64,000 nt of DNA from the IMG/VR virus record IMGVR_UViG_3300035698_035310, positions 1 to 64,000 of that record. One strand, 5' to 3'. The notes beneath the pieces are model-generated. The model was not told the DNA's origin. It searched no databases and saw only the letters and a program-made list of their open reading frames with translations. Positions 3,736 to 63,383 of the stretch are shown here, one piece after another (position 1 is the first letter of the stretch; every line of letters starts with the position of its first letter). A program made the position numbers and the translations under genes.

Positions 3736-3738
3736 CTT

Positions 3739-4248
3739 ATGGCAGATAAAGAGTATGATTATTCTAGCTCACAAATAAACATGAATGAAGAATGGACTTC
3801 TATTTTTCTTGATCGTGGGCGAGAATTAATATCAAAAAAAGATTTATCCGGTACGGGTTTAGAAACTAATCCACATGTAACTGTTTTATATGGGATTCAC
3901 GATCTAGACCCGTCCCCGAAAATCGTAGATATCATTGAAACTTATCCAAGGTTTAATATTACACTTGGTGCCGTTTCGTTATTTAAAGAGGATGCTTTTA
4001 ATGTAGTCAAAGTCGATGTTGAAAGTTCTGATTTATATTCATTGCGTGGCGCATTCATGAATAATTGTTATTTTACAGACAAACATCCTGAATATATTCC
4101 ACATATGACAGTGGGTTTCGTTAAACCAGAGTCGTGCAATCATTTAGATGGCAGTCTTGCATTTAAAGGTATGTCGTTTGTGGCAGAAGAAGTAGTTTAT
4201 AGTTGTAAAGATGGTGTCAAACGATTTTTAACATTGGGTTTGCGATAA
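3739..4248 (+). CDS. 2H phosphoesterase (LigT/Acb1-like fold)
   Basis: Two HxT motifs: PHVTVLYG and PHMTVGF. Confidence 0.8.
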   Translation: MADKEYDYSSSQINMNEEWTSIFLDRGRELISKKDLSGTGLETNPHVTVLYGIHDLDPSPKIVDIIETYPRFNITLGAVSLFKEDAFNVVKVDVESSDLYSLRGAFMNNCYFTDKHPEYIPHMTVGFVKPESCNHLDGSLAFKGMSFVAEEVVYSCKDGVKRFLTLGLR

Positions 4249-11192: not shown

Positions 11193-11945
11193 ATGTCAAA
11201 ATTTAACAACGCTGGCGTTGCACCAATCAATGTAACTACAATTCCAAATACACGCACCAAAGAAGGTTCACGATCATTTAAGTTTGATCATAAAATGGAA
11301 CTATATCAAACGGTAGTTACTACACTGTTTGGTGAAAGTAATTTTTATGAAAGCAAAGATGAACGCACCAGTCGTATTACACGTCTTGTTCGCAAGTGTG
11401 TAGAAGGCGGCGATGCACAATATGTTGCTAACCTTGCAGTATATGCTCGTGAGAAAATGTATCTTCGTTCTATTCCTGTATTTTTAACCGTTACACTTGC
11501 AAAAGAAATTCGCGCAGTTGATAGTTCCGACTACAACGTTCGATTATTGACAGGTCGTGTTATTCAACGTGCAGATGAAATTCGTGAAATGTTCGCTGCT
11601 GCGGAAGCAGTATTTGGTAATTCAAAGGATAATAAAACATTTAAGAAAGTTGTACCACGTGCGCTTCTTAAAGGTATCGCTGATTCGTTTAATAAATTTG
11701 ACGCTTACCAATTCAAAAAATGGTCCGGTGGAAAAGGTTCAATTAAATTCACCGACGTAATGCGCGTTGTTCATCCAACACCAAAGGATGAAGCACAGAA
11801 CGCAATCTTTAAGAACATCATGGAAGACACCTTGCCAGCAATCGATACTTGGGAAACCAATATCTCTGGTGATGGTTCTAATACAGAAAACTGGCAGTTA
11901 GTTGCTGATGCCAAAATAGAAAAAACTGCTTGGATTAGGGTATAA
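11193..11945 (+). CDS. rsr: TROVE/Ro60 RNA-binding protein, N-terminal half
   Basis: FGESNFYE, YAREKMYLRSIP, QRADEI, FDAYQFKKW, DVMRVVHPTP, TWET. Confidence 0.88.
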   Translation: MSKFNNAGVAPINVTTIPNTRTKEGSRSFKFDHKMELYQTVVTTLFGESNFYESKDERTSRITRLVRKCVEGGDAQYVANLAVYAREKMYLRSIPVFLTVTLAKEIRAVDSSDYNVRLLTGRVIQRADEIREMFAAAEAVFGNSKDNKTFKKVVPRALLKGIADSFNKFDAYQFKKWSGGKGSIKFTDVMRVVHPTPKDEAQNAIFKNIMEDTLPAIDTWETNISGDGSNTENWQLVADAKIEKTAWIRV

Positions 11946-11964
11946 TCAGTTATATTTTTGTTTC

Positions 11965-12016
11965 TTTACTGCTTTATTGATAAATAGATATAACAGGTTA
12001 TCATAAAGGCGGTAAA
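11965..12016 (+). promoter_or_regulatory. Late promoter GATAAATA (11979-11986) with RBS-sequestering hairpin for the endonuclease
   Basis: tttactgctttattgataa / ttatcataaaggcggtaaa; same logic as T4 I-TevI control. Confidence 0.7.
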
Positions 12017-12019
12017 AAC

Positions 12020-12973
12020 ATGAAGACAATAAAAGAATGGATTGAATGCAATCTTATAAAAGAAAATGGTTCATTGAATGAACGACGAATGGGAAAGTTG
12101 TCCAAAAAAGATAGTAGAACGTGGGTGGAAAAACATCATATCGATAGATTTGATGTTATAATAAAATGGGGAAATGGAAGGTCGTTTAAAGAATGCGTCT
12201 ATATGATATTACAAAATATAATAAACATACCATCATGTAAGATATGTGATAATGATGTAGCATTTATAGATAATAAAAATGGTTATAGATTATATTGTTC
12301 AACTGTATGTATGAATAATGACCCAGAAAGAATAATAGAAATAGAAAAAACTAAAAGATCAAATGGTTCATATGATCAAAAAAGAAAACGATTAGAAGAA
12401 ACTAATATAAAAAAATATGGAAAACCGTTTTTTGTTAATAGAAAAAAAGGAAAAGACACATTAAGAAAAAACTTTGGCGTTGATCATCCGGCACAATCGT
12501 CTATCGTTAAAAAGAAAATGAAAGATACAATGGTTAAAAAATGGGGCGTAGAAAATCCCATGTATATATCAACTTTTGTTGATAAAATGATACAAAGTAG
12601 AGGAAATAAAATAACCGGAAGTATCAGGTGTAGAATAAAACGATTTGGTGATAAAGAGATTCCATATCAAGGAACATATGAAAAAATATTTTTAGAAAGT
12701 TTATCGAATAAAAATATCGAACGAATAAAAAGAGGTAATAAAGCAGTTTATTTTATAGACGGGAAACAAAAAACATATTATCCAGATTTTGTTATAGAAA
12801 ACACAGTTTATGAAATAAAATCGAAATGGACGTGGGATAATAAAGGTAAGAATAAAAGATTAAGAGTAATAAACAAGTTGAAGTTGAGATCGGCTAAACG
12901 GCAAGGTCATAATGTCATTTTGGTATTAGATCATAAACAGTTAACTTACAACGAAGCAATACGCTTGTTATAA
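12020..12973 (+). mobile_element. Free-standing homing endonuclease (PD-(D/E)XK, TnsA-like C-terminus) inserted in the TROVE gene
   Basis: CKIC, YCSTVC, KKWGVENP-type repeats, YYPDFVIENTVYEIKS. Confidence 0.8.
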
Positions 12974-12987
12974 AGGAGACCAAACCA

Positions 12988-13983
12988 ATGCAAGTTATAG
13001 ATAAGAAATTTTTAAAAGATAAAGATAATGTTGTATTCACAGATGAATTTGATATTATTAATGGTGTAAAATACCAAAAAGTTAAATGGGATATAGAGCA
13101 TCCAAAAATGGGTCTGATGGCAAGAGTTCGAAATCTTCGTAATTTAACCAAGCATGATGTTGATTTGGATTACACTATAAAATGTTTGACTGATGCTAAC
13201 GCAGTCAAAAAATCAAAGATGCTCCCGTTTCGCTGGTATTCGGCGTATAGAGAACTTGGTGGTTCTGGAATAGAAGCAAACAATCATTGGTATTATAAAG
13301 AACCAGCTAAACCAGACGTTATGGCTTCACCACATTTGTTGGCTGCATTGGAAGATGCATTTGACATGAGTGTATCCAATTTGCCAGACTTGGGCGATGA
13401 TGTACTTATCGTAGTTGACCAAAGTGGTTCTATGTAAGACACTATCAGCCAACATAGCACAGTAACATGTGCTGAAATCGCTAGTGTGCTTGGTGCTGCG
13501 GTGTGGTTCAATCAGATTCGCCAAGGTAAAAAAGCTATGGTAGCAGGTTTTGCATCCACTGGAAAGGTTTACAATTGGAGTGCACGAACTAGTGCGCTTG
13601 CTGCGGCTAAAGAAATGATGAACACCAGTTTGGGTGGTGCAACGAATATCGGCACTGCGTGGGGTGCTGCAAAAATGGCTAATCTTAAACCATCAACTAT
13701 TGTGGTTCTTAGTGATATGCAAATGACTGGCGATAGCCGCGCTCGTTATAATACAATTATGGTTCCAGAGCAATACGGTCTTGCTGATGATGACACTTTG
13801 AAAATAAGTATCAACATTAAAGGTTATGATAATAGCCCGTTGGCTATGAACAATGGCTGGATTCAAATTGCTGGATGGTCAGAAAAAATATTTGATCTTA
13901 TTGACGCAATGCGCAAACCAGGTGATGCTGTTAAGTTGATTAATGATCTTGATTTAAACTTGACAAAGTCGCAACAGGTATAG
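12988..13983 (+). pseudogene. rsr: TROVE/Ro60 C-terminal half incl. vWA domain, with in-frame TAA at 13435-13437
   Basis: KMGLMARVRNLRNL, SKMLPFRWYSAY, VDQSGSM*DTISQHSTVTCAEIASVLGAA, GGATNI, LSDMQ, GWSEKIF. Confidence 0.8.
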
Positions 13984-28004: not shown

Positions 28005-28150
28005 TATTGTTATAGCTATGGAAATTAGTTCCTTCTTATCCCAACCTGTAGGTCGTAGGTTCGAATCCTGCTCCTCGCGCCAATTATGCGGGGATAGCTC
28101 AGTGGTAGAGCAACTGGCAATTTTACTGGTTCCAATTATTATAGCAATAT
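28005..28150 (+). ncRNA. Circularly permuted tRNA-like RNA / YrlA variant
   Basis: 3' tRNA half with GCCA, linker attat, then 5' half, all inside atattgttata/tatagcaatat stem; CTATGG-N6-GTTCCTTC variant motif. Confidence 0.75.
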
Positions 28151-28453: not shown

Positions 28454-28625
28454 GCGGGTATCGTATAATGGTATTATCGCAGCCTTCCATGTGATATGTT
28501 TAACATATCTCAGGTTGAGCCATTTATTGGCTCCTTGAAGGTCGAGGGTTCAGACCCCATCCGGTTTAAGCCCGGTAGACCAACTTAAGCTGATGACGGG
28601 AGTTCGATTCTCCCTACCCGCTCCA
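28454..28625 (+). tRNA. tRNA-Gly(TCC) with 98-nt intron at 37/38 (28490-28587)
   Basis: 5' exon ends cagc-ctTCCa; 3' exon a-gctga...TCCA; exons make a standard Gly cloverleaf. Confidence 0.85.
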
Positions 28626-33666: not shown

Positions 33667-33676
33667 GGGAAACTAT

Positions 33677-34931: not shown

Positions 34932-35039
34932 TTCCAAGTAGCTCAGATGGTAGAGCGTCTGACTGTGGAACAGATGAGCCTAAAGCTTTGAAGTTCAAAT
35001 TTAATCAGAATGTCGGCGGTTCGATCCCGTCCTTGGAAG
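34932..35039 (+). tRNA. tRNA-Asn(GTT) body with 35-nt insertion in the anticodon
   Basis: tctga-ctGT[insert]Taa-tcaga; U1:A72, G73; no encoded CCA. Confidence 0.75.
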
Positions 35040-39973: not shown

Positions 39974-40621
39974 ATGACGAACAGAGTAGTTTTAGTAAGA
40001 CACGGACAAAGCACCGGAAATGCAGACGGTAGTTTTTATAAACACAATGTAGACGCCGCTGTATGTTTAACGCAACTTGGTGTAAGCCAAGCGTTACATG
40101 CTGGTCAAAAACTTGATGAATTGCGTGGTCATTTAAAATGGCCTTGGCACGGTGTTTTAGCGTTCACCTCAGAATATACAAGAGCGCAACAAACAGGTAG
40201 AATTGTTCTTGATAAAATGGGTCTTAAGCATATTGATATGACAATAACACCCGCGATAAATGAACGCATGTATGGTGATAATGACACGCCACCAGATTGG
40301 CATAAAAACGCTTATGCAGTATGTTCTAATGGTGAATCGTTATTAGCCGCACAGGCAAGATTTAACGGATGGTGGGCAACGATGGAGCCTAATCTATCAC
40401 AGAGAGATATCGTTTTATTTTGTCATGGTGAAATAATGAAAAGTATAACTGCGACATTACTCAATCTATCACCAACAGAATTGGTTAAAGTGTCGACACC
40501 GAATGCGGTCCCAGTTATATTTGAACGAACTGTTGATTCTTTAACGGGACGATCAACATACAATCCATCAATTCATACATTTAAACGTTATGATGATACA
40601 GCAACCGACGTAATTCATTAA
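39974..40621 (+). CDS. Histidine phosphatase (phosphoglycerate mutase family)
   Basis: LVRHGQS, S...RA.QT, INER..G, FCHGE. Confidence 0.9.
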   Translation: MTNRVVLVRHGQSTGNADGSFYKHNVDAAVCLTQLGVSQALHAGQKLDELRGHLKWPWHGVLAFTSEYTRAQQTGRIVLDKMGLKHIDMTITPAINERMYGDNDTPPDWHKNAYAVCSNGESLLAAQARFNGWWATMEPNLSQRDIVLFCHGEIMKSITATLLNLSPTELVKVSTPNAVPVIFERTVDSLTGRSTYNPSIHTFKRYDDTATDVIH

Positions 40622-49926: not shown

Positions 49927-51661
49927 ATGGGATTCCCAATAGTAGCAGCGTTTGGACTTGGAATGGTAGGCGCAGTAGGCGCAAAAGTTGGAACACAGCA
50001 TGTTTATCCATGGTTGGTTGAAAATGCTAGCAAAGGCAAAGAAACATTGAATGATTGGTTAGATTATACACTCGCCAAGGTGGAAACAAAGTTTGATTTC
50101 GAACATGCTGAGTTAAAAGGCGACATTGAAGAAAAAAATATCGAAAGAAATATGAACATCATCAAATAAATGTTGACTAAATGTTGACTATATGCAATAT
50201 TGTGATAATATAAGTAAATATTACAAACATTGGAGTAAAGCGCATGTCTATAAAAAATTTAAAAGAAGGTAAATGTGAATTCCGTTAGGTAACTTAACTT
50301 AATGGAGAAAACACATGAGCAACACAAAAACTACCGACAAGATCATTCTTATACATGAGGATGGCAATCGTTGGGTATTTAATGACATATATGATGCTGC
50401 AATCAAATTGATTGATTGGAAATTAATTTATCATTGGGGGTCTGATTCTCACATTGGTGATCATTTTGGATTGATTTATGATACCGGCATCAATTGTTTT
50501 GGCAAACCAATAGGTCGTGTATCGTATATTTTACGCTCGGAATTTGGCGACGTTATCACCAAAGACGACATATCCGAAGCATTCGCAAAAATACGAACAG
50601 ATTCACGAAATGCTAGAATTGATAAAGAAATAGCACGCGCACAACGAAATTTCCGTTGTGCTCCAGAACCAAGTACTGGTTACAGACGATATGGAAATTG
50701 TTATCGTCATATTAGCACATATTCTGAACATCGCGATAATGATGCACTCAATTACGATGATGATGCAATAGAATACAATATTAAATCTCGTTCAAAACGC
50801 ACTAAGTCATATCTTCCTAATTATTGGGATGATCGCATTCGTTCTGATTATGACGTTAAAAATTGGAAACGACAGCGCAAAACACAGTGGAAGCAAAAGG
50901 ACTAAATATATTCATGAGAGCACATGAAATACTTATTGAAGCAAATCTTGAAACTTTAAAAAAGAATAAAGTTGTATTGAGCGACGAAGAGCGTACCAAA
51001 GTTATGGATGCTGGCGCAATTTGGCATCATGGGCCTAATGGCGCACCTTCACCAGCTATATGGAAAGGTAAAGATAGTAAAGGTAAAATGTGGTATGCAT
51101 GTAATACACATAGGGCTTGCGCAATAGAAGATTCATTAAGTAAAGCAATTAAAGAATATCCATCAATAGAGGCATCAGCATAATATGAGTTTTGTAAAAA
51201 CCATAGAACTTCCACCCAATGCATTGATAATAAACCCAGAAGATAGAAATTCTAATGGTCGTTATGAAATTGCATCAGGTTTTATTAATATATTTCAATT
51301 TGAAATAGTAGCAGATGGTCAATTTCGTGTTCCAGTTAGGCATTTGAACACCAATGAACGATCACATGAATCGTTTTCGTTGCGTGCGTGGATTAGCGTT
51401 GATCCAAACGGAATAGAATTATTTTATAGATTTCATCCAACCTCTGGTGGTTTATCGCATTTAATATACGATGAATCGATAGACCCACCACCAGAACCAA
51501 CAAAACATTCACCGATGCGAAATGAACATTCACCTATAACATTTACACCACAAGACAGCCTTGTTCCATTAGCCCCAGGTGTATATTATTATAATATATT
51601 AAATATGATATTAAAACCAAATGCTTATGAAATATCGTTTGACGTGCCATTCGTATTTTAA
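49927..51661 (+). CDS. Hypothetical genes 49927-50169, 50315-50905, 50914-51183 (MRAHEILIE), 51185-51661
   Basis: RBS-preceded ORFs; 50315 has LP.YWDD..R...KNWK..RK.QWK phage motif. Confidence 0.6.
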
Positions 51662-51664
51662 TTT

Positions 51665-51735
51665 ACCCCCGCCGATGATTCGGACATGACTTTCCTAAAG
51701 TTATTGAAACGGTTTGATTCCGTTCGAGGGTACCA
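51665..51735 (+). tRNA. tRNA-Arg(CCT)
   Basis: tgact-ttCCTaa-agtta; short D arm; ACCA. Confidence 0.8.
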
Positions 51736-51744
51736 CAATCAAAC

Positions 51745-51776
51745 GCCATCTTTTTTCGGAAGGGTGGCTTTTTTAT
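51745..51776 (+). terminator. Intrinsic terminator
   Basis: gccatctttt-ttcg-gaagggtggc + T tract. Confidence 0.75.
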
Positions 51777-51810
51777 TGACTTTTTTCATACATGTTTGTA
51801 TACTTTGTAA

Positions 51811-52308
51811 ATGATAAAACTACCAAAAAATAAAATAGATTGGATTGATGAAATTGGTTCTTGGACCGGAATAATAAGTGTGCTAATGCTTTCTAGTAAT
51901 ATAGGAATGAATGGATTAGCGTTTACTATATTCACAGTGACGTCTATATGTTTTGTATATGTCGCACATGAAAAAAAACTGAATGGCATGAGGCGAATGA
52001 ATGTTGTCATGTTTTTTATTAATATATGGGGTATATGGAGATGGGCAATTCAACCTTGGATGATTGGTGTTTAAATGAGTTTGTTTGAATACAAAAAAAT
52101 TGTAAATAAAAAAACGACACTTGAATACGTCGTTAATATGGAAGATGTGCCATATGATGAATTTCATCGATTAAAAAAATGGATTCAAGGTAATATTCCA
52201 TCATCTGATCGATATACACCAGATTGGAATGATCATACGGAAAAAATGGAATTTAGATTTAGGTATGAAGAACACGCAATGGCGTTTAAATTAATAATAC
52301 AATATTGA
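51811..52308 (+). CDS. PnuC-like small membrane protein (51811-52074) and AMAFKL-motif protein (52075-52308)
   Basis: Three TM helices ending INIWGIWRW. Confidence 0.5.
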
Positions 52309-52365
52309 CTTTTTAATGATTGATATTGTATAATGAAAGAAATTATAAACAAGGAGAGATTACTA

Positions 52366-52631
52366 TGAAGTGGAATTTAACAAAAGATAGAAGAAGTGTT
52401 GAACGTGATACAGAAGAAGCATCTAATGATCCAGTATGGATTGAAGTGGATTCTAGTTTTGTAGAAGCAATTGCTTATAACGATGATGGTTTGTATGTGA
52501 CGTTGTCGCATGGATCATACCTTTATAACGGTGTTCCTGAACAAGTATTCGAAGATTTCAAGAATGCATCTTCAAAAGGTCAATTTTTTAATTTAAATGT
52601 TAAAGATATATACACATTTAGCAACCGTTAA
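52366..52631 (+). CDS. KTSC-domain protein (start ATG 52366)
   Basis: SSFVEAIAYN...Y.Y.GVP...F..ASSKGQFFN..VK..Y. Confidence 0.88.
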
Positions 52632-52655
52632 GGTATTATAAACTAAATATTAACA

Positions 52656-53222
52656 GTGGTTATAATACAAGGAATGAACATGAAATTTTTTCAATGGCTA
52701 GATAATAAAGAAGCTGAAAAAATGCCGGAACGAGATATTGATGACATAAAACCGATATCAAGTAAAAAATCAGAGTTAGATAAAAAGATTTTTGAAGTAG
52801 AAAATGGGGTAATTGATATTACTGCATTGGATAATGATGAAATCATAGAAAAGAAATTTGTTCATGCTGCGACAGGTAAAAAATATAAAACTGAACGTGC
52901 GCTAAAAGCTGGAATAACACGATATAATAAGAAACAGAATGTTTCACCTAGCTCGATAAATCTTGCAGGTAGAAACACACCAGAAGCACGAGATAAAGCA
53001 AAAAAAATTATTAAAAAAATGAATGCTGCTGAGAATCTTACATTGATAAAAACGGGTTTAAAATACGATAAACCCGACGATAGTGTAAATCAAGTTAAAA
53101 CAGATAAAGAATTAAAAATATTTGTCGATGCAGAAACAGGCAAAACGTATAAAACAGCACCTGCTTTAAAAGCAGGTATAACTAGACGATTAAAAAAACA
53201 AAAACAAGGCGATAAAATATGA
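52656..53222 (+). CDS. Hypothetical protein with two TGK.YKT..ALKAGITR repeats
   Basis: Internal duplicated motif. Confidence 0.7.
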   Translation: MVIIQGMNMKFFQWLDNKEAEKMPERDIDDIKPISSKKSELDKKIFEVENGVIDITALDNDEIIEKKFVHAATGKKYKTERALKAGITRYNKKQNVSPSSINLAGRNTPEARDKAKKIIKKMNAAENLTLIKTGLKYDKPDDSVNQVKTDKELKIFVDAETGKTYKTAPALKAGITRRLKKQKQGDKI

Positions 53223-53461
53223 GTAATAGACACGGAAAATGTGAAATCGGTAAAGGATTATCAGTAGCTGTACGCGGCGATGAAATCGAAAAAGCGATGA
53301 AAAAATTCAAAAAAATGATTATCAATGAGGGATTTTTAAAAGAACTAAAAGCCCGTCAAGAATATGAAAAACCAAGTGATAAAAGACGTCTTGCTAAAAA
53401 AGAAGCAGTGCGTAGACAGCAAAAAGCGATAGCGTTACGTATTAAACACGACGGTTATTGA
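53219..53461 (+). CDS. rpsU: Ribosomal protein bS21
   Basis: IEKAMKKFKK...G..KE.K.R..YEKPS.KRR..K..A.RR. Confidence 0.9.
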   Translation: MSNRHGKCEIGKGLSVAVRGDEIEKAMKKFKKMIINEGFLKELKARQEYEKPSDKRRLAKKEAVRRQQKAIALRIKHDGY

Positions 53462-53991
53462 ACATAATGCGAGTAGGTAGAGAGTTAGACGCGACTATCG
53501 CATTAACTATCATGGGGCTGAAGGCAGTGGAGCCTGAGCATATACCAAAATATTCTTCTGATATATTTGCCGCACATAAAATAATATCTAAATTACAAAC
53601 CATTGGATGGTTTTGCAATGTTGGTTCACGTATAGGCAATGATGGATCGTTGTTTTACAGAGCTAGATTCTTCCAAAATGGACGTGAATGTGAACGATTT
53701 GCAGATACGATTCCTATGGCATTATGTACCGCATCGCTTGCAGTAATAAAAGATGAATATTTTGAATATGTAGATATATTAAAAGACAACGACGATGATT
53801 CCCCCATTGATATAATACCAAGTGCGACCACTGGATTTTCAAAAATAGACGCCGATGATGATATATCTGATATTGTCCAACAAGTGATGTTAAAACATAG
53901 CGATGTGCATCCCAATTGGAATGTTATAACAAAATCATTAATAGATGATTTACGAGAAAAAAATTATATAATAATAAAAAAACCATCATAG
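53458..53991 (+). CDS. Phage ABA-sandwich-domain protein
   Basis: PKYSSDIFAAH.II...A.T.PMALC.A.L. Confidence 0.7.
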   Translation: MNIMRVGRELDATIALTIMGLKAVEPEHIPKYSSDIFAAHKIISKLQTIGWFCNVGSRIGNDGSLFYRARFFQNGRECERFADTIPMALCTASLAVIKDEYFEYVDILKDNDDDSPIDIIPSATTGFSKIDADDDISDIVQQVMLKHSDVHPNWNVITKSLIDDLREKNYIIIKKPS

Positions 53992-54041
53992 TCTATTGAC
54001 CTTTTAGATATATATGGTATTATTACATATATTTAAAGGAG

Positions 54042-55067
54042 TTGAAAATGTTATTAGAACGTGATAAATTTAGAGAAGGTGTGTTTGAACGCGATAGTCA
54101 TAAGTGCGTCATGTGTGATGCACCTGCTCAAGATGCTCATCACATCATTGAACGTAGGCTCTTTACGGATGGTGGCTATTACTTAGATAATGGGTCTAGC
54201 CTGTGTGGTGAACATCATTTAGCAGCCGAATATACAACGCTTTCGCCACAAGAAATTCGTGAAAAAATAGGCATCACTAAAGTCGTATTACCAGAGCATT
54301 TATACCGCGATCAAGAGTATGACAAATGGGGCAACCCTATGTTACCTAACGGCACACGCCTTAAGGGTGATTTGTTTGATGATTTGTCGGTTCAGAAAGC
54401 ATTAAAGGCTGGTGGCGTTTTGGGAAGTTTTACGCACTTAGTGAAATATCCAAGAACATATCATGTAATGTGGAGTCCCGGTTTAAGTAATGATGACCGT
54501 GCGCATAACTCATTGGATCAGTTTGAAGGAAAAAATGTTGTCGTCCATTTGAAGATGGACGGTGAAAACGCAAGTTTTTATAATGATCATTATCACGCAC
54601 GTTCGTTAGATACTGTTAATCATCCATCTCGCAAATGGGCTAAAATGCTTCATGCGCGTATTATGGGTGATATACCAGAAAGCTGGCGTGTGTGTGCTGA
54701 GAATTTGTATGCTGAACATTCGATTCATTATGACGATCTTGAAGCCTTCGTTCTTGCTTTTTCTATATGGAATGAAAAAAATGAATGCCTTGGTTGGGAT
54801 GAAACCCAAGATTGGTTTGAGTTGTTAGAAGTTCCACAAGTTCCAGTTTTGTATGAAGGATTATTTTCAGAAGAAAAGTTGCATGAAATTGAATCAACGC
54901 TTGATTTTGAAATTGATGAAGGATATGTGATGAGAACGCGAGATAGTTTCCATTATAATGACTTTCGGCAAAATGTCGCTAAATATGTTCGTAAAGGGCA
55001 TGTTCAACATTCAACCGAAGGACACTGGATCAATCGACCAATTACGCCTAATGAACTGAGAAAATAA
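54042..55067 (+). CDS. HNH domain-RNA ligase (Rnl2-like nucleotidyltransferase) fusion
   Basis: CVMC...DAHHI...N..LC..HH; KYPRTYH, KMDGEN, AEN, EGYVMR, KYVR. Confidence 0.85.
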   Translation: MKMLLERDKFREGVFERDSHKCVMCDAPAQDAHHIIERRLFTDGGYYLDNGSSLCGEHHLAAEYTTLSPQEIREKIGITKVVLPEHLYRDQEYDKWGNPMLPNGTRLKGDLFDDLSVQKALKAGGVLGSFTHLVKYPRTYHVMWSPGLSNDDRAHNSLDQFEGKNVVVHLKMDGENASFYNDHYHARSLDTVNHPSRKWAKMLHARIMGDIPESWRVCAENLYAEHSIHYDDLEAFVLAFSIWNEKNECLGWDETQDWFELLEVPQVPVLYEGLFSEEKLHEIESTLDFEIDEGYVMRTRDSFHYNDFRQNVAKYVRKGHVQHSTEGHWINRPITPNELRK

Positions 55068-57671: not shown

Positions 57672-58825
57672 ATGAATGACACTGTAACAGTAGAAGTAGC
57701 AACTGTTGAAGGCAAAGATATTAAAGCCGAAATGGATTTAAGCCTTTCCGAAAGTAAAGGAGCACTTGCGGTTGCTTCTGAAAACACTTCCCCCGCAGAT
57801 CAAAAGCGCGTTAAAGAATTGATATTGGTAGCACCGATTCAATTATCAACTTCGGCGTTGAAGCGCAGGGTGGTTTAAGTAAACAATCTGATGCGATGCT
57901 TAAAGGAGTTCGCAATAAAGATACTGGACCTGCTGGTGAAGTTATGAACGGTCTTATGGTTCAAATTCGTGGTTTGGGTCTTAGTGATCTCGATCCTGGT
58001 GAAAAACGAGGATTTTTCGGCAAAATGTTAGGTAAACTTACACCTGTTCAAAAATTCCTTCAATCATATGAAAGCGTTGAAAGTCAAGTTGACGCCATGG
58101 TTGCGAAATTGACGCAAGAAAAAAACACACTACAGCGCGATGTTATTATGCTTGATGCAATGTATAATGAAGCATTGGTATTTTTTGATGATTTGGCTTT
58201 TTATATTGAAGCCGGTGAATTGAAACTTGCTGATGTTAAAAACGTTGATATTCCAGCATTGGCGGATAAAGCACAGCAATCAGATAATATGCTTGACGCA
58301 CAAGCACTTCGTGATATTAACGAACGCACACTCGATCTTGAACGTAAAATTCAAGACCTTATGCTTACACGCCAAGCAACAATGCAAATGCTTCCGCAAT
58401 TACGCATGATTCAAGATGTTGATAAAGGTCTTGTAACAAAGATTCAATCTTCTATTCTTGTTACCATTCCACTTTGGAAAGGCCAAATTGCTATGGCTAT
58501 CACACTTTGGAGACAGGCTGGTGCAATCAAAACACAAAAAGCAGTTTCCGATGCCACCAATGATATGTTGCTACAAAATTCTGCATTGTTGAAGCAGAAC
58601 AGTGGTGACGCTCGATGCGAAATGGAACGTGGCGTTCTTGACATGGCAACATTGAAGCAGGTTAATGATGATCTTATCGCTACCATCGTGGAAGCCGGTC
58701 AGATTGCTGAAGAAGGCAAACGAGCGCGTATTGCTTCAAGGGTTGAAATGGATAAGTGTGAAACTGAACTTAAAGCTGCTTTGAAAAATTCAGGTGCTAA
58801 TGCCCTGAACGCAATCGCAGCCTAA
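57672..58825 (+). pseudogene. telA: Toxic anion resistance protein TelA, frameshifted near 57818
   Basis: -1 shift restores KEIDIGSTDSIINFG.EAQ..L....D.ML..VR; Q..PQ.R.IQ, IPLWK.Q. Confidence 0.8.
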
Positions 58826-58855
58826 TTATTGAAAAATAGGAAAGGAGACTATATT

Positions 58856-60582
58856 ATGAATAATCGACTTAAGATGAGTATCTACGCCGCAGCATTGGTA
58901 TTAACCAGTGCTGTGTCGGCGCAGGCGGCTAGCAATTATGTTGGCATGGATTCTGTGAACAACGTTGTCACAGAAGGCGTTCGTGATTGCCGTGGTGGTG
59001 AGGGTAATAATATTCCCATTATCACGTGGGGTGGTGATATGATTACCATTCATGCAAACGGTGATGCGCTTGTAACCAAAGCAGGTAGTGTGTTTGACAA
59101 AGAAGGTCTTGCACTTACCTTGAAACGTGAAGACGTATTCACCAAACAGGTTGCCGGATATCTTCGTTGTGATACGCCATATATTCGTGGCACACAAGGT
59201 CAGTTAAATCTTGCTGCGGCGGTTACTGAAAACGATCCACGCACAAAAATGGTTACTATCTTCCAGCACACATGGTCGAATGGCGGTGATGCGTTGGTTG
59301 TTAAAGATGGCATCAAATCATTGGCGGATTTGAAAGGCAAAACTATCGCGTTGCAAGCATATGGACCACATATTAGTTATTTGTTTAAAATTCTTTCTGA
59401 TGCAGGACTTAAACCAACCGATGTTAAATTGAAATTCACCAAAGATTTAGTTGGACTCGACGAGGATACAACGCCGGGTGTTGCGTTACTTGAAGATAAA
59501 AGCATTGATGCGGCGATGGTTATTATTCCTGATGCATTAACACTTACCTCTGGTGGAACAGTAGGAACTGAAGCCGAAGGTGCTGTAGAAGGGGCAACTA
59601 TTCTTCTTACTACAAAATCAGCAAGTCGTGTTATTTCTGATGTATACGCAGTTCGTCAAGATTATTTTGACGCTCATAAAGCAGAAGTTCAATCTTTTGT
59701 TCATGGGTTGATGGGTTGATGGTTGCAGAAGAAAATTTAGTTGCTGCCGCACGTGGTAAAACCGCCGCGTTTAAGAGTACTGTTGCTGCTACAGCAACCA
59801 TTCTTCTTGGTGCCCCTACCGCGATTGGTGATGCAGGCGACCTATGGATTGATGCTGAAACCACAGGTATCAACGGGAATGTGAAGTTTTTCACAAATAA
59901 TAATTTTTCACGCAACTTTACGGCTATTACTGCCGAAATTCAACAATCATATGTGGATTTAGGGCTTCTACCAAAAGCAATGGTTTTGGCTGACGCTGGT
60001 TGGGACTACAGTGTATTGGCGATTGACTTGAAAACTGCTGGTAAGATTGAAGCACCCAGGTTTGATACTAAAAAACTTACTGCGGCTGTAACGGCAAAGG
60101 CTGCTACTGGTGATCTTGACAAAGGCGCATTGTTTACCTTCGAAATCAATTTTAAGCCAAACGTTAAGGAATTTCCAGTAGCGTTATACATGGACGCATT
60201 TAAGAAGGTGATTGATCTATCAAACACTTATTCTGGTGCAGTGATTACGGTTGAAGGACATTCCGATCCTTATGGTTATCAGAAAAAGCAGGAAAAAGGT
60301 GTAGGCGAAGGAATTCTTTCTAAAATCAAGCAATCTGGACGCACATTGAGTATTAAACGTGCTGGTGCGGTTCGTGATGCGATTATTGCCCTCGCCGAAC
60401 AAGATGGTATTACGATTGACAAAAGTCAGTTTGTTGCCATCGGACTTGGTATCTCTAGCCCAAAGAATGCAATTATGCCTAAATCCATAGCGGAATGGAC
60501 TACAATTACTGCGCAAAATCGTCGAGTTGTGTTTAAATTGATTAATATCGAAGCAGAATCTTCTGAATTCGAAGCACTTTAA
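58856..60582 (+). pseudogene. ABC-type substrate-binding + OmpA-like domain protein split by 8-bp tandem duplication at 59706-59721
   Basis: ggttgatg x2; removing one copy gives HGLMVAEEN and a 572-aa ORF; WSNGGDALV, EGHSD, QNRRV. Confidence 0.8.
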
Positions 60583-60597
60583 GGGGGGATTAATAAT

Positions 60598-61386
60598 ATG
60601 AAAATATATAACAAACTCTTTATTTCATCTATCCTTGTAGCCAGCGTTCTTTTAGTTGGCTGTGAGGAAAACGCCGCACCTCTTGCCCCAAAAGCGGCAG
60701 TTGCTACAACTCAAACTTCGGATAATACACCACAGGCGGAACAAGCGCCTTGGGTTTGGCCGGGAACATCAAAAGGTGCTATTGCGTTAGCATCAGATTT
60801 GACAGCAAATAACTATATGGTAGTATATGATGGTTCTGGTAGCATGGGTGACCCATCATGTGATAAAAATAGCCAAACATCTAAGCATGCAGAAGGCAAA
60901 ATTGCTCTTAAATCATTTATCAATGCGATACCCGATGAATCTAATATTGGTTTTTACGCATTTGATAATAATGGAAAAGGTGTACGAACACAACTTAATA
61001 CAGGCAACAAATCAAAAATCGTTGCTGAGATTGATAGTGTTAGTCCTGGTGATGGAACTCCGTTAAAAAGTGCGGTTAGAACAGGTTATGATGCATTGAC
61101 TTTACAAGGTCAAAAACAACTCGGTTATGGAAGATATGTGTTAGTTATTGTGACTGATGGTGTTGCAAGTAGCGGTGAAAGTCCAACCAATATTGTTAAT
61201 GACATCATTGACGATACACCAGTTGAAATACATACTGTTGGTTTTTGTTTGGGTGATAAACATACACTTAATCAACCGGGACGAACATTTTATGCTTCTG
61301 CGACAAGTTCCGAGGAAGTGTTGAAATCTCTGGAAGATGTTCTTTCAGAATCTTCGGATGTTGATGATAACGACTTCAGTAACTAA
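60598..61386 (+). CDS. vWA-domain lipoprotein
   Basis: Lipobox LLVGC; DGSGSM, GTPL, TDG. Confidence 0.88.
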   Translation: MKIYNKLFISSILVASVLLVGCEENAAPLAPKAAVATTQTSDNTPQAEQAPWVWPGTSKGAIALASDLTANNYMVVYDGSGSMGDPSCDKNSQTSKHAEGKIALKSFINAIPDESNIGFYAFDNNGKGVRTQLNTGNKSKIVAEIDSVSPGDGTPLKSAVRTGYDALTLQGQKQLGYGRYVLVIVTDGVASSGESPTNIVNDIIDDTPVEIHTVGFCLGDKHTLNQPGRTFYASATSSEEVLKSLEDVLSESSDVDDNDFSN

Positions 61387-61397
61387 CACTTGACATG

Positions 61398-61435
61398 TTG
61401 GGTGGTCATGTTAATATATGATCACCCAATATTAT
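61398..61435 (+). terminator. Terminator-like hairpin overlapping a TTGACA promoter (61390)
   Basis: ttgggtggtcat/atgatcacccaa. Confidence 0.55.
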
Positions 61436-61451
61436 TTTATAAGGAGTTATT

Positions 61452-61802
61452 ATGGAAGAAAATACGTATACTGTAAAACAATCACCAAATGGATCGACGC
61501 ATTGGTATGATGAAGATGGAGCATTGCATTGTATCGGTGCACCTGCTATTATTACACTCAGCAAAGGTTTAATGATTAGTGAAGAATGGTATAAGCATGG
61601 TAGATTGCATAATTTAAACGGACATGCAAGAATTGGCTACAAACAAAACGCCGATGGTGATATGGATGTGACGTGGTCGCAACATTGGATTGATGGTGAA
61701 CAATTGTCGGAAAAAGAATTCACCGAACAGACCACTGTTAAACAAATGACCATGGATGAAATAAACACTAAGTTGGGTTGTATTGTTGATATTGTTGAAT
61801 AA
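61452..61802 (+). CDS. LH(R/C)..GPA-repeat hypothetical protein
   Basis: LHCIGAPAI, EWYKHGRLHNLNGHA. Confidence 0.6.
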   Translation: MEENTYTVKQSPNGSTHWYDEDGALHCIGAPAIITLSKGLMISEEWYKHGRLHNLNGHARIGYKQNADGDMDVTWSQHWIDGEQLSEKEFTEQTTVKQMTMDEINTKLGCIVDIVE

Positions 61803-61829
61803 TATTTTTACTAAAGAAAGGATTATAAA

Positions 61830-63383
61830 ATGAAACCATTACATATCGTAATTGCTTTAATTTTAACACTTATTGGTGTTGGAGGAATGGTCGGGTATAA
61901 AGTGTTTGACGATGCTTCGTTGACTGCTTCCACGGATTCCGCTAATGTTCGCGAAACTGTAAATATTGGTGTTGATAGTTGGGCTGGTTATACAGTGTTA
62001 TGTTCAACTGAAACGAGACGATTAGCGCTTGTTGATGGCATTCTTGTAAAGTGTCACGATGATAAAGCCAACTATACAGATCGTATGGCTAAACTAGCCA
62101 GTGAAGAATTGCAAATGGCTGCTGCTGCGGTTGATGGTTATGTTCTTGCAGGTGATGCAGTTAAATATCCGGGCAGTGTTACATTTGTTATCGATGAATC
62201 ACAAGGTGGTGATGTTATTATCGCCAACGCAAGTGTAGCAAAAAATATCAATGATTTGAAAAATCGCAGTGGTGTTAAAATTGCATTTACCCCTGATTCA
62301 CCAAGTCAGACGTTACTTACTAAATGGAGTAGCGACTTTGATGTTAAAATTAATGATCCCAAGGCGATAACATTGGTTCACGCTAATGGTGCAGCAGACG
62401 CTGCTAAAAAACTTCAAAATGGTGAAGTAGATGTTGCAGTTGTTTGGGAACCACACGCATCCAAATTGTTAAGTAATGCAAATTTTGTTAAACTTATTGG
62501 CACAGAAAGCACTAAAAACCTTATCGTTGATGTGTTACTCACCAATCAGCGTTATGCAAAAAGCAATCCAGATGTAATGAAGACGGTTGTTAAATCATAC
62601 TTTTTAGCATTGGAGCATTATAAAACAAACACCAAAGAATTTGATGATGAGATTATTCGTTATGCTGGTGCCAGCCGTGATCAAGTTGACGCAATTAAAG
62701 CGGGTATCAATTGGGTTGATTTACCACACAATGCCGCAGATTGGTTGGGTATTAGTCAAACTGGCGGTAAAGCGCAACGACAGTTGTATGACACCTTCAA
62801 CTCTGCGGTTCGTTTATATGTCAATAGTGGTGATTTTACTACAAGCCCTATTCCTGGTGATGATCCGTTTCGTTTGATTGATTCAAGTGCATTCAATGAC
62901 GTATATACATTGGGAATGACTGGAAAACTTGGTGTTATGTTTCAACCTATCACAGTTATCAAAGACGTTAGTGTTACACGCCCCTTTAAGAAACTTTCAC
63001 CGGGTCGTTGGGCTAAACTTAAAGATATTGGATCATTGAAATTACAAGCTATTACGTTCAAGCGTGGAACATACGAACTTGAATCAACAGGTCAATCCGC
63101 ATTCAAATCATTGGTTGAAATGCTTGAAACATATCCAAATTATCGCATTAAAGTTGTGGGTCATTCGGGCAAGCGCGGAGATCAAGCGGCTAATATGGTT
63201 CTTTCTAAAAAACGTTCTATATCTGCGGCAAAATATTTGATGGACAAATATGGCATTGACAAAAATCGAATTTACGCGTATGGTGTAGGCAATGGACAGC
63301 CACCTCGCCGTGAAACCGGTGAAACGAAACGTGCATATAATGCAAGGTGGCCTCGTGTTGAACTTATTTTAGTGGAAGGATAA
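61830..63383 (+). CDS. Second ABC-type substrate-binding + OmpA-like domain protein
   Basis: N-terminal TM; DES.GGD..I, WEP, VGHS, RRVE-like PRVE. Confidence 0.85.
   Translation: MKPLHIVIALILTLIGVGGMVGYKVFDDASLTASTDSANVRETVNIGVDSWAGYTVLCSTETRRLALVDGILVKCHDDKANYTDRMAKLASEELQMAAAAVDGYVLAGDAVKYPGSVTFVIDESQGGDVIIANASVAKNINDLKNRSGVKIAFTPDSPSQTLLTKWSSDFDVKINDPKAITLVHANGAADAAKKLQNGEVDVAVVWEPHASKLLSNANFVKLIGTESTKNLIVDVLLTNQRYAKSNPDVMKTVVKSYFLALEHYKTNTKEFDDEIIRYAGASRDQVDAIKAGINWVDLPHNAADWLGISQTGGKAQRQLYDTFNSAVRLYVNSGDFTTSPIPGDDPFRLIDSSAFNDVYTLGMTGKLGVMFQPITVIKDVSVTRPFKKLSPGRWAKLKDIGSLKLQAITFKRGTYELESTGQSAFKSLVEMLETYPNYRIKVVGHSGKRGDQAANMVLSKKRSISAAKYLMDKYGIDKNRIYAYGVGNGQPPRRETGETKRAYNARWPRVELILVEG

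What the first reader, a model, noticed from the sequence alone, without database searches (positions are those of the whole stretch)
54042..55067. HNH-RNA ligase fusion completes a candidate tRNA cut, heal and seal system
Seen: N-terminal HNH domain fused to a ligase with KMDGEN motif I. The same window has 2H phosphoesterases, His and HD phosphatases, a DEDDh exonuclease, Ro60, five Y-like RNAs and three RNAs needing anticodon-loop joining (28005, 28454, 34932). Established: T4 Pnk/Rnl1 repairs PrrC-cut tRNA; bacterial Ro60/Y RNA genes cluster with RtcB RNA repair. Inference: with the attenuator this forms an integrated translation-rescue programme that senses tRNA loss, induces spare tRNAs and repairs or matures broken ones.
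Basis: partly seen in the sequence, partly recalled or inferred. Interest (0 to 1): 0.68.

Follow-up and report, generated by a model that had tools for sequence, protein, structure and literature searches.

The report
Phage HNH nuclease–RNA ligase fusion
The gene is real and encodes a nuclease joined to an RNA-sealing enzyme, a fusion already noted in giant phages but never tested at the bench.

Summary
The ORF is real.

The protein has an intact N-terminal HNH zinc-finger nuclease, a family-specific linker, and a minimal C-terminal Rnl2/Rnl5-like ATP-dependent RNA ligase with motif I KMDGEN.

It belongs to a large, mostly viral family: 6,247 relatives, PHROG 24030. The architecture was already described by Aravind's group (2016, 2021). 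I found no biochemical study of it.

The "integrated cut, heal and seal programme" is only weakly supported:
- Pfam finds one 2H enzyme, one His phosphatase and one DSP phosphatase in the window.
- It finds no HD domain and no DEDDh exonuclease there.
- Rfam gives one weak YrlA-like RNA, not five.
- The canonical heal-and-seal pair (a kinase-phosphatase like Pnkp plus an Rnl1-like ligase) lies at 336–340 kb, outside the window.
- No gene neighbour is conserved across 80 related loci.

Some signals are real:
- Carriers hold many tRNA genes.
- Ro60 co-occurs in 12/24 carriers against 1/12 controls.
- Two tRNA genes in the window carry true anticodon-loop inserts, and one is conserved with covariation in Salicola phage SCTP-2.

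The most likely role is an RNA break-sealing enzyme that makes or trims its own ligatable ends. A role in splicing these tRNA inserts remains untested.

The parts
54048..55067 (+).
   Evidence: ORF. AAGGAG at 54036-54041 lies 6 nt before ATG 54048. The identical database protein P0001 is 339 aa. PHROG 24030 'RNA ligase' matches full length, E 2.8e-130.
53996..54041 (+). Possible own promoter (TTGACC-16-TATTAT with TG extension, 53996-54023) and ribosome-binding site (54036-54041)
   Evidence: Consensus scan, 10 of 12 matches; sequence. This is a pattern match only, not evidence of function.
54048..54299 (+). HNH (beta-beta-alpha-metal) zinc-finger nuclease module, about aa 1-86
   Evidence: C22, C25, H33, H34, N50, C55 and H59 are invariant in 119 homologues. 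HNH PHROGs match aa 8-64. Fold matches IscB HNH at Z 6.5 and 6.4, then McrA, TagI, Cap5 and GVE2 HNH at Z 5.5-5.9, over aa 3-105. The family profile hits IscB HNH at E 0.008.
54300..54431 (+). Family-specific linker and N-terminal extension of the ligase fold, about aa 87-130 (invariant D94 K95 W96, R106, G109)
   Evidence: Conservation. Structural alignments to Rnl1, Rnl3 and Trl1 begin at model residues 86-100. Ligase-only homologues lack this part.
54432..55064 (+). Minimal adenylyltransferase (RNA ligase) domain, aa 131-341. Motif I is KMDGEN at 54552-54569 (K171). Also present: pre-motif KYPRTxH, Ia HAR, III E220-N221, IV E293-G294, V K314/R317
   Evidence: Pfam PF09414 E 2.7e-29. Invariant motif residues. 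AlphaFold model pLDDT 93.7. Fold matches T4 Rnl2 Z 15.5, NgrRnl Z 15.1, REL1 Z 14.1 and MthRnl Z 12.6; DNA ligases score 12.3 or lower. Foldseek ranks RNA ligases first.
53219..53461 (+). Phage ribosomal protein bS21-like gene, two genes upstream. It is syntenic with the ligase in a related contig
   Evidence: 48% identical to an L132 gene that carries PF01165 Ribosomal_S21. The upstream block 50315-53991 is conserved in L132.
3739..4248 (+). The only 2H phosphoesterase in the genome, 50 kb from the ligase; a link to the ligase is not shown
   Evidence: PF13563 E 1e-7. Single genome hit. No PF02834. HVTV and HMTV motifs present. 2H is present in only 4 of 24 carrier genomes.
11193..13437 (+). 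Ro60/TROVE gene in two pieces (11193-11945, 12988-13437) around an inserted ORF (12020-12973). It co-occurs with the ligase family, but a functional link is not shown
   Evidence: TROVE hits. DUF7487/CdiA_C ORF. Co-occurrence 12/24 against 1/12. Distance test.
28005..28135 (+). YrlA-like (Y RNA-like) permuted tRNA-like RNA
   Evidence: Rfam RF02553, 32.4 bits, below the cut-off of 69. The fold has a closed acceptor-like stem, T arm, D arm and a terminal stem.
28454..28622 (+). tRNA-Gly(UCC) gene with a structured insert of about 100 nt after anticodon-loop position 36/37
   Evidence: Rfam tRNA 38.9 bits with a 100-nt insertion. 24 of 26 other phage contigs with the same T arm and acceptor have an uninterrupted 70-71 nt gene; the acceptor strand was not located in the other two. 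Fold z -4.5. The insert is unique in the genome.
34932..35039 (+). tRNA-Asn(GUU)-like gene with an insert of about 35 nt inside the anticodon (between nt 35 and 36)
   Evidence: Rfam tRNA 54.1 bits with a 38-nt insertion. A homologous interrupted gene lies in Salicola phage SCTP-2 at 298729-298847, with the same borders and a covarying 4-bp basal helix.

Best explanation
The gene encodes one member of a large, mostly phage-borne family of two-module enzymes.

The C-terminal module is a minimal ATP-dependent polynucleotide ligase of the Rnl2/Rnl5 (nick-sealing RNA ligase) fold. It most likely reacts with ATP at K171 to form ligase-AMP. It would then transfer AMP to a 5'-phosphate RNA end and join that end to a 3'-OH.

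The N-terminal module is a catalytically intact HNH nuclease that occurs almost only attached to this ligase. HNH nucleases leave 3'-OH and 5'-phosphate ends, which are exactly what the ligase needs. The most economical mechanism is therefore a self-contained cut-or-trim-and-seal enzyme for broken or mis-ended structured RNA, most plausibly tRNA. It would need no separate kinase or phosphatase.

It is one of three RNA ligases in this phage. It works beside, not as part of, the canonical pair (a kinase-phosphatase like Pnkp plus an Rnl1-like ligase) encoded 77 kb away round the genome. It sits in a loose accessory region of translation genes (tRNAs, bS21, Ro60), not in an operon with healing enzymes.

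Shown: the domains, motifs, fold, family size and genomic associations. Inferred: RNA as substrate, tRNA as target, and the role of the HNH module.
For: - Domains and motifs.
- Confident whole-protein model, pLDDT 93.7 and pTM 0.85, which suggests a fixed two-domain arrangement.
- RNA ligases outrank DNA ligases in both fold searches: T4 Rnl2 Z 15.5 and NgrRnl Z 15.1.
- There is no OB domain or C-terminal domain.
- The phage has a separate NAD-dependent DNA ligase-like gene.
- Family size: 6,247 full-length relatives at 56-79% identity among the top 120.
- The N module alone finds only 119 hits, mostly fragments. Ligase-only homologues start exactly at KYPRTxH with no HNH ORF upstream. So the HNH module is a dedicated accessory of an autonomous ligase.
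- The same ligase fold occurs fused to AAA_33 polynucleotide-kinase-like domains in other clusters, so end-healing modules occupy the same N-terminal place.
- Carriers hold many tRNA genes: 25, 42, 28 and 34 in four of five isolates, and 12-72 in nine of ten metagenomic genomes.
- 39 of 80 loci have tRNAs within 10 kb, 368 of 396 on the ligase strand, and 6 loci have one within 200 bp.
- The fusion has been noted before and read as RNA repair (PMC7824862).
Against: - No biochemical data exist for any member in the library searched.
- Fold cannot settle substrate choice between RNA, DNA and hybrids.
- tRNA density around the gene is flat rather than peaked at it. In five isolated phages the gene lies 27-200 kb from the tRNA arrays. 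The tRNA link may therefore only reflect a shared accessory region or large genome size.
- Trimming by a nuclease would lose nucleotides from a tRNA anticodon loop, so faithful repair by this route is hard to picture.
- The closest HNH relatives (IscB, McrA, TagI, Cap5) cut DNA.
- No conserved partner gene points to a pathway.
Confidence: 0.6

Rival explanations
1. The fusion is the sealing and cutting arm of an integrated translation-rescue programme. Together with the window's 2H enzyme, phosphatases, exonuclease, Ro60 and Y RNAs, it senses tRNA loss and repairs or matures broken tRNAs.
For: - The window does hold a 2H enzyme, His and DSP phosphatases, Ro60, a YrlA-like RNA, about 30 tRNAs and interrupted tRNA genes.
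- Ro60 is present in 12/24 carrier genomes against 1/12 controls, Fisher one-sided P 0.015.
- Ro60 lies nearer the ligase than chance: mean normalised distance 0.29 against 0.5, P about 0.006.
- In L040, Ro60, a tRNA, the ligase and another tRNA are adjacent.
Against: - 2H is present in only 4/24 carriers.
- HD and DEDDh were not found in the window.
- Only one weak Y-like RNA was found.
- There is no RtcB, Tpt1 or RlaP.
- The canonical healing enzyme sits next to a different ligase, outside the window.
- No neighbour is conserved.
- Most Ro60-bearing phages lack the fusion.
- The statistics are not corrected for relatedness, genome size or completeness.
Confidence: 0.12
2. The HNH module acts on DNA, not RNA. 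It would be either a selfish homing nuclease that spreads the gene, or a weapon against host or rival-phage DNA, as Iyer et al. suggest. The ligase would do an unrelated RNA-sealing job.
For: - The nearest HNH structures are DNA nucleases: IscB, McrA, TagI, Cap5, GVE2.
- The gene sits in different contexts in different lineages. L131 at 68% identity shares no neighbour; relatives also lie on a conjugative-element-like contig.
- Free-standing HNH homing genes are known to lodge in the tRNA regions of T4 and T5 (own knowledge). This would also explain the tRNA proximity.
- The proposal appears in PMC7824862.
Against: - The N module is almost never found apart from this ligase.
- It is conserved at about 60% identity across thousands of sequences, with invariant residues in the linker. 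That is unlike fast-evolving homing nucleases.
- It has no extra DNA-binding module.
- Synteny is kept within the window's own lineage.
- pTM 0.85 suggests the two modules pack as one unit.
Confidence: 0.18
3. The fusion is a one-protein splicing enzyme for the short inserts that interrupt some phage tRNA genes. HNH would cut both borders, leaving 3'-OH and 5'-phosphate ends, and the ligase would join the exons.
For: - The window has two tRNA genes with true anticodon-loop inserts, too short for known self-splicing introns.
- The host appears bacterial, judged from phage genes for IF3, ClpX and OmpA. It should therefore lack an archaeal splicing endonuclease.
- The tRNA-Asn insert is conserved with a covarying helix in SCTP-2, which carries the closest isolated homologue, 55% identical.
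- An interrupted tRNA lies 8 kb from the ligase in L055.
- 'Enigmatic' tRNA introns in megaphages have no known splicing route (10.1101/356790).
- The end chemistry of HNH and the ligase match.
Against: - RsoM2USA, CcrBL9 and ME3 carry the fusion but show no tRNA match longer than 91 nt.
- Long anticodon loops are no commoner near the gene (3/171) than in control loci (1/154).
- The family has thousands of members, while interrupted tRNAs are rare.
- No RNA data exist for this phage.
- The inserts could instead be removed by host RNases plus the Pnkp-like and Rnl1-like pair, or never be removed.
Confidence: 0.08

Closest known systems
HNH-fused Rnl2-like RNA ligases of jumbo phages (Burroughs & Aravind 2016; Iyer et al. 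2021, PMC7824862; PHROG 24030)
   Same: Same architecture and family. The full-length PHROG match has E 2.8e-130. Homologues of 46-55% identity occur in Salicola SCTP-2, Ralstonia RsoM2USA, Caulobacter CcrBL9/CcrSC and Acinetobacter ME3, and at 30% in halovirus HGTV-1.
   Different: Nothing material. This is a new sequence from a salt-lake metagenome phage. The published description is computational only.
T4 RNA ligase 2 (Rnl2) and trypanosome RNA-editing ligase REL1
   Same: These are among the best structural matches to the adenylyltransferase domain: Z 15.5 and 14.1, 175-180 residues aligned, rmsd 2.8-3.2. A KY-type segment precedes motif I, and all nucleotidyl-transferase motifs are present.
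   Different: The protein has no C-terminal helical domain and ends 24 residues after motif V. Its ligase domain is C-terminal, behind an HNH module. No sequence-level match to any solved ligase reaches E 0.01 with the family profile.
Rnl5 nick-sealing ligases (Naegleria NgrRnl, Deinococcus DraRnl)
   Same: Same domain order: an N-terminal accessory module followed by a C-terminal adenylyltransferase with no further domain. Z 15.1.
   Different: The N-terminal module here is an HNH nuclease plus linker, not an OB-like fold.
T4 Pnkp + Rnl1 tRNA repair; bacterial Pnkp (kinase + metallophosphatase + ligase)
   Same: The same phage encodes such a pair: AAA_33 kinase plus calcineurin-like phosphatase (409 aa), and an Rnl1-like ligase (PF09511 E 4.9e-31) 1.6 kb away.
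   Different: That module lies at 336-340 kb, not in the window, and uses a different ligase. The HNH fusion has no kinase or phosphatase beside it.
Salmonella rsr-yrlBA-rtcBA (Ro60, Y RNAs and RtcB in one operon)
   Same: Ro60, a YrlA-like RNA and an RNA ligase occur in one genome region. Ro60 co-occurs with the fusion in half of the carriers.
   Different: There is no RtcB. Ro60 lies 41 kb away, not in an operon. The ligase chemistry is the opposite: 5'-phosphate/3'-OH rather than 3'-phosphate/5'-OH.
IscB/Cas9-type HNH domains
   Same: These are the closest sequence and fold relatives of the N module, sharing a CxxC ... HH ... N ... CxxHH pattern. E 0.008; Z 6.4-6.5; 25% identity.
   Different: There is no RuvC domain, no guide RNA apparatus and no other IscB domain. 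Similarity is limited to about 75 residues.

Membership tests
ATP-dependent RNA ligase superfamily (Pfam RNA_ligase PF09414; covalent nucleotidyltransferases) | Motif I KxDG with the adenylate-accepting lysine | tested here: met
   KMDGEN at aa 171-176. K171, D173, G174 and E175 are invariant in 119 homologues.
ATP-dependent RNA ligase superfamily (Pfam RNA_ligase PF09414; covalent nucleotidyltransferases) | Motifs Ia, III, IIIa, IV and V in order, and the family profile score over the curated cut-off | tested here: met
   H185/R187, E220-N221, F240/W243, E293-G294 and K314/R317 are conserved. PF09414 scores 102.9 bits against a cut-off of 27.
ATP-dependent RNA ligase superfamily (Pfam RNA_ligase PF09414; covalent nucleotidyltransferases) | Adenylyltransferase fold | tested here: met
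   Model pLDDT 93.7. Z 15.5 to T4 Rnl2 and 15.1 to NgrRnl.
ATP-dependent RNA ligase superfamily (Pfam RNA_ligase PF09414; covalent nucleotidyltransferases) | Forms ligase-AMP and joins 3'-OH to 5'-phosphate RNA ends | not testable with these tools
   Needs purified protein.
Rnl2 family (T4 Rnl2 type) | N-terminal adenylyltransferase followed by a C-terminal helical domain needed for step 2 | tested here: not met
   The protein ends 24 residues after motif V. The alignment to 2hvq covers only the adenylyltransferase part. The ligase domain is C-terminal.
Rnl5 family (DraRnl/NgrRnl) | N-terminal OB-like domain before a C-terminal adenylyltransferase | tested here: not met
   The domain order matches, but aa 3-105 match HNH nucleases, not OB folds.
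HNH (beta-beta-alpha-metal) nucleases | General-base His, metal-binding Asn and His, and a zinc-binding Cys/His cluster | tested here: met
   H34, N50 and H59, plus C22, C25, C55 and H58, are present. All but H58 are invariant. HNH PHROGs match at E down to 3.5e-8.
HNH (beta-beta-alpha-metal) nucleases | HNH fold | tested here: met
   Z 5.5-6.5 to IscB, McrA, TagI, Cap5 and GVE2 HNH over 66-92 residues. The Z values are modest, but the hits are all of one kind and are supported by sequence.
HNH (beta-beta-alpha-metal) nucleases | Nuclease activity and its substrate (DNA or RNA) | not testable with these tools
   Needs an assay.
HNH-RNA ligase fusion family (PHROG 24030) | Full-length match to the family profile with both modules | tested here: met
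   E 2.8e-130, aa 4-341 on profile positions 3-342 of 342. 6,247 relatives.
T4-type heal-and-seal system (Pnkp + ligase acting together) | End-healing kinase/phosphatase encoded with, or fused to, this ligase | tested here: not met
   No such neighbour in the window or in 80 related loci. The genome's Pnkp-like gene sits beside the Rnl1-like ligase at 336-340 kb.
Ro60/Y RNA-linked RNA repair operon | Ro60, Y RNA and ligase in one operon | tested here: not met
   Ro60 lies 41 kb away. Adjacency was seen in 1-2 of 80 loci. Co-occurrence is 12/24.
Homing endonuclease genes | Presence/absence polymorphism at a fixed site in close relatives, and site-specific DNA cleavage | tested here: inconclusive
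   Context differs between lineages but is syntenic with the 76%-identical relative. No pair of close genomes with and without the gene was available.

The most novel reading that the evidence does not exclude
The HNH-ligase fusion is a self-sufficient cut-and-rejoin enzyme that removes the short, non-self-splicing inserts found in the anticodon loops of some giant-phage tRNAs. These are the 'enigmatic introns' of megaphages. The HNH cuts would leave 3'-OH and 5'-phosphate ends that its own ligase seals. That would be a third, previously unknown chemistry of tRNA splicing, possibly working with phage Ro60 and Y-like RNAs.
Probability: 0.08. Interest if true: 0.85.

Novelty: new member of a known kind. 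Interest (0 to 1): 0.4.

Why it matters
The fusion is abundant in tRNA-rich giant phages, yet no member has been tested at the bench. If the HNH module prepares RNA ends for its own ligase, this would be an RNA repair or processing route that needs no kinase or phosphatase. It would also suit breaks made by metal-dependent host tRNA nucleases.

This work adds four concrete handles:
- The HNH module is dedicated to this ligase.
- The ligase module can stand alone.
- Ro60 tends to travel with the fusion.
- Two carriers share a conserved interrupted tRNA-Asn gene.

Several carriers (SCTP-2, RsoM2USA, CcrBL9, ME3) are culturable, so these ideas can be tested directly.

Tried and rejected
- Single-sequence AlphaFold gave an unusable model, pLDDT 31. 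It was replaced by the alignment-based model.
- Megablast of the locus against isolated phages found nothing.
- Burroughs & Aravind 2016 (PMC5062991) is not held. The prior description is cited through PMC7824862.
- The neighbourhood analysis of 80 loci found no conserved partner.
- Ligase-only homologues have no N-module-like ORF upstream, so there is no split version of the fusion.
- PADLOC found no defence-system match.
- aragorn's intron mode was unreliable: 1 of 3 calls was meaningful and it missed the tRNA-Gly insert. I wrote a strict detector instead. It recovers both window cases but showed no enrichment of interrupted tRNAs near the gene, 3/171 against 1/154.
- An exact search for an uninterrupted relative of the tRNA-Asn-like gene found none.
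- Listing tRNAs in ten large carrier genomes was cut at 150 rows. It gave counts only, not lengths.
- No RNA sequencing run holds this phage.
- The Lak-A1 hit is only a ligase fragment beside a TnpB-like ORF. It was read with TAG=Q because the Lak paper reports that code.
- The large representative-protein search and complex prediction were not run, because no claim here rests on them.
Full report
**Observation**

The + strand ORF ending at 55067 is real. The ORF finder starts it at TTG 54042. However, AAGGAG lies at 54036-54041 and ATG at 54048, and the identical database protein is 339 aa (P0001). The gene is therefore 54048-55067.

Residues below are numbered from 54042 (341 aa), as the tools read it.

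- Pfam RNA_ligase PF09414 matches aa 165-316, E 2.7e-29.
- PHROG 24030 'RNA ligase' matches end to end, E 2.8e-130.
- Eleven HNH PHROGs match aa 7-71, E 3.5e-8 to 6e-3; the best is aa 8-64.
- KMDGEN is at aa 171-176.

**Anatomy**

I aligned the protein with 34 and then 118 homologues. Three groups of residues are invariant:

- The HNH set: C22, C25, H33, H34, N50, C55, H59.
- A linker block: D94, K95, W96, R106, G109.
- The ligase motifs: K135/R138/T139/H141 before motif I; K171/D173/G174/E175; H185/R187; E220/N221; E293/G294; K314/R317.

AlphaFold with the 119-row alignment gave pLDDT 93.7 and pTM 0.85. The single-sequence attempt had failed.

Foldseek ranks RNA ligases first: the Aquifex 3qwu protein, NgrRnl, archaeal Rnl3 and T4 Rnl2.

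The exhaustive structural search gave these scores for aa 131-341:

| Structure | Z |
|---|---|
| T4 Rnl2 | 15.5 |
| NgrRnl | 15.1 |
| REL1 | 14.1 |
| MthRnl | 12.6 |
| DNA ligases | 12.3 or lower |

For aa 3-105 it gave IscB (Z 6.5 and 6.4), McrA, TagI, Cap5 and GVE2 HNH (Z 5.5-5.9).

With the family profile, the only solved structures reached by sequence are IscB HNH domains, E 0.008. The ligase module is therefore far from every characterised Rnl family in sequence.

The protein has neither the C-terminal domain of Rnl2 nor the OB-like N domain of Rnl5.

**The family**

The word-index search found 6,247 relatives at E ≤ 1e-5. The top 120 are all full length and 56-79% identical.

ESM Atlas clusters are 86-96% viral. 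Their structural neighbours include fusions of the same ligase fold to AAA_33 kinase domains.

Among isolated phages, full-length homologues occur in:

- Salicola SCTP-2 (55%)
- Ralstonia RsoM2USA (53%)
- Caulobacter CcrBL9/CcrSC and relatives (about 51%)
- Acinetobacter ME3 (46%)
- halovirus HGTV-1 (30%)

Ligase-only forms occur in XacN1, Atu_ph07 and Phosso. They begin exactly at the KYPRTxH segment and have no HNH-like ORF upstream.

Searching the N module alone (aa 1-134) gave only 119 hits, mostly fragments on short contigs. The ligase can therefore stand alone, whereas this HNH module is essentially always attached to it.

The architecture is not new. Iyer et al. 2021 (PMC7824862) state that some Rnl2-family ligases of jumbo phages carry N-terminal HNH domains, citing Burroughs & Aravind 2016. 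I found no biochemical study.

**The genome and the claimed system**

The window is the first 64 kb of a 359,044-bp phage record from a salt-lake metagenome.

Pfam scans of 67 window ORFs show:

- EF-G, ClpX and IF3
- AspRS and a HisRS-like fragment
- thymidine kinase
- one 2H phosphoesterase (3739-4248)
- a DSP phosphatase (33647-34153)
- a His phosphatase (39974-40621)
- Ro60/TROVE in two pieces

Whole-genome family searches found:

- only that one 2H
- no RtcB
- no HD domain
- RNase_T-type DEDDh only at 140.5 kb
- no Tpt1 and no RlaP
- an NAD-dependent DNA ligase-like gene at 173 kb

The genome holds two more RNA ligases. One is Rnl2-like (326574-327584). The other is Rnl1-like (336352-337575, PF09511 E 4.9e-31). 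A 409-aa protein combining an AAA_33 kinase with a calcineurin-like phosphatase lies 1.6 kb downstream of the Rnl1-like gene, at 339154-340383. That is the canonical heal-and-seal pair, and it lies outside the window. The HNH fusion does not 'complete' the system.

**Neighbourhood and co-occurrence**

The immediate neighbours are unannotated proteins, a bS21-like gene (53219-53461), a glucosaminidase and TelA. The upstream block is syntenic with the contig of a 76%-identical homologue (L132) but not with that of a 68%-identical one (L131).

In 80 IMG/VR loci with ±10 kb flanks, the commonest neighbour families occur in only 11 loci. They are an R2K ATP-grasp protein and an ATP-dependent DNA ligase. 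Rnl1-like genes occur in 6 loci, Ro60 in 2 and 2H in 2.

tRNAs are frequent near the gene:

- 39 of 80 loci have at least one within 10 kb.
- There are 396 in all, 368 on the ligase strand.
- 6 loci have one within 200 bp.

However, tRNA density is flat across the flanks rather than peaked at the gene. In the isolated phages the gene is 27-200 kb from the arrays.

Most carrier genomes hold many tRNA genes: 25, 42, 28, 4 and 34 in the five isolates, and 12-72 in nine of ten metagenomic genomes.

Across 24 large carrier genomes:

| Gene | Present in |
|---|---|
| Ro60 | 12 |
| Rnl1-like ligase | 12 |
| 2H | 4 (1 over the cut-off) |

In 12 large tRNA-bearing phage contigs that lack the N module, Ro60 is present in 1. 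Fisher one-sided P is 0.015.

Where both genes occur, Ro60 lies closer to the ligase than chance: mean normalised circular distance 0.29 against 0.5, P about 0.006.

These statistics are not corrected for relatedness, genome size or completeness. Most Ro60-bearing isolated phages also lack the fusion.

**The RNAs**

Rfam at curated thresholds finds only tRNAs. At relaxed thresholds there is one YrlA-like match, 28048-28114, 32 bits against a cut-off of 69.

The 28005-28135 RNA folds as a permuted tRNA-like body closed by a terminal stem. That is what a Y-like RNA looks like. It does not need joining.

Two tRNA genes do carry inserts.

*tRNA-Gly(UCC), 28454-28622.* It has a structured insert of about 100 nt (fold z -4.5). 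Of 26 other phage contigs with the same T arm and acceptor strand, 24 showed an uninterrupted 70-71 nt gene; my script did not find the 5' acceptor strand in the other two. The insert is therefore real and lies after position 36 or 37.

*tRNA-Asn(GUU)-like, 34932-35039.* I assign it from its variable loop and G73, using my own knowledge of E. coli tRNA-Asn. It has an insert of about 35 nt between anticodon positions 35 and 36. SCTP-2 has a homologous interrupted gene with the same borders. Its 4-bp basal helix covaries: GAAC/GUUC in this window against GGCC/GGCC in SCTP-2.

The inserts are unique in the genome. They are too short for known self-splicing introns.

'Enigmatic' tRNA introns have been reported in Lak megaphages (10.1101/356790).

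The link to the fusion is open:

- RsoM2USA, CcrBL9 and ME3 carry the fusion but show no long tRNA match.
- My detector found long anticodon loops in 3/171 tRNAs near the gene against 1/154 in control loci.
- No RNA run holds this phage.

**Interpretation**

The best-supported reading is an RNA-sealing enzyme whose dedicated HNH module cuts or trims nucleic acid to the 3'-OH/5'-phosphate ends that the ligase needs. It would work independently of the kinase-phosphatase route and be one of several back-up RNA ligases in a tRNA-rich phage.

RNA as the substrate, tRNA as the target and the HNH role are all inferences.

The rivals are:

- a DNA-directed (homing or conflict) HNH module
- a splicing role for the interrupted tRNAs

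The last is the most novel reading that the evidence does not exclude.

**Procedural notes**

- An alternative code (TAG=Q) was used only for the Lak-A1 locus, where the source paper reports it.

Noticed in passing
window 11193-13437: The Ro60/TROVE gene is in two ORFs, 11193-11945 and 12988-13437, in different frames. A 317-aa ORF lies between them (12020-12973; DUF7487 plus a weak CdiA_C match). Other phages have a single 520-600 aa Ro60 ORF. This looks like a mobile insertion that split the gene.
   Followed up: partly
window 28454-28622 and 34932-35039; SCTP-2 (L127) 80-198; L055 1752-1866: tRNA genes with inserts of 33-100 nt in the anticodon loop. The tRNA-Asn-like insert is shared with Salicola phage SCTP-2, and its basal helix covaries, so it is a conserved structured element and not decay.
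   Followed up: partly
window 28005-28135: A YrlA-like (Y RNA-like) permuted tRNA-like RNA, 15 kb from Ro60. It scores below Rfam's cut-off, but its fold is typical.
   Followed up: partly
G000 326574-327584, 336352-337575, 339154-340383, 272472-272960: Outside the window lie an Rnl2-like ligase, an Rnl1-like ligase, a kinase plus metallophosphatase like Pnkp, and a stand-alone AAA_33 kinase. The Rnl1-like ligase and the Pnkp-like protein, 1.6 kb apart, are the genome's canonical RNA heal-and-seal set.
   Followed up: yes
window 28369-28446: A tRNA with anticodon CUA (an amber-suppressor type, which aragorn calls 'Pyl'). Window ORFs read well with the standard code, so recoding was not examined.
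   Followed up: no
window 1618-3735, 14020-14538, 38372-39377, 43160-44974, 53219-53461: The phage encodes EF-G, IF3, a HisRS-like fragment (possibly split), AspRS and a bS21-like ribosomal protein. This is an unusually full set of translation genes.
   Followed up: partly
window 18169-18286 and 35179-35270: Two further odd tRNA-like genes. One has two T-arm-like hairpins (31 bits). The other has about 19 extra nt in the D-loop region (36.7 bits).
   Followed up: no
L040 7466-11085; G028 58286-60944: In one carrier, Ro60, a tRNA, the HNH-ligase and another tRNA are adjacent. In a non-carrier, a ligase-only homologue lies 2 kb from Ro60.
   Followed up: partly
L126 (Lak-A1) 2501-4092: The Lak megaphage match is only a ligase fragment (aa 134-203). 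A 420-aa TnpB-like ORF follows it, read with TAG=Q. This suggests a gene disrupted by a transposon.
   Followed up: no
window 57896-63383: TelA, NMT1-like, VWA and OmpA-domain genes sit in a stretch of higher G+C (0.39-0.42 against about 0.35). IMG/VR classes the record as a provirus. Whether this end is host-derived was not examined.
   Followed up: no
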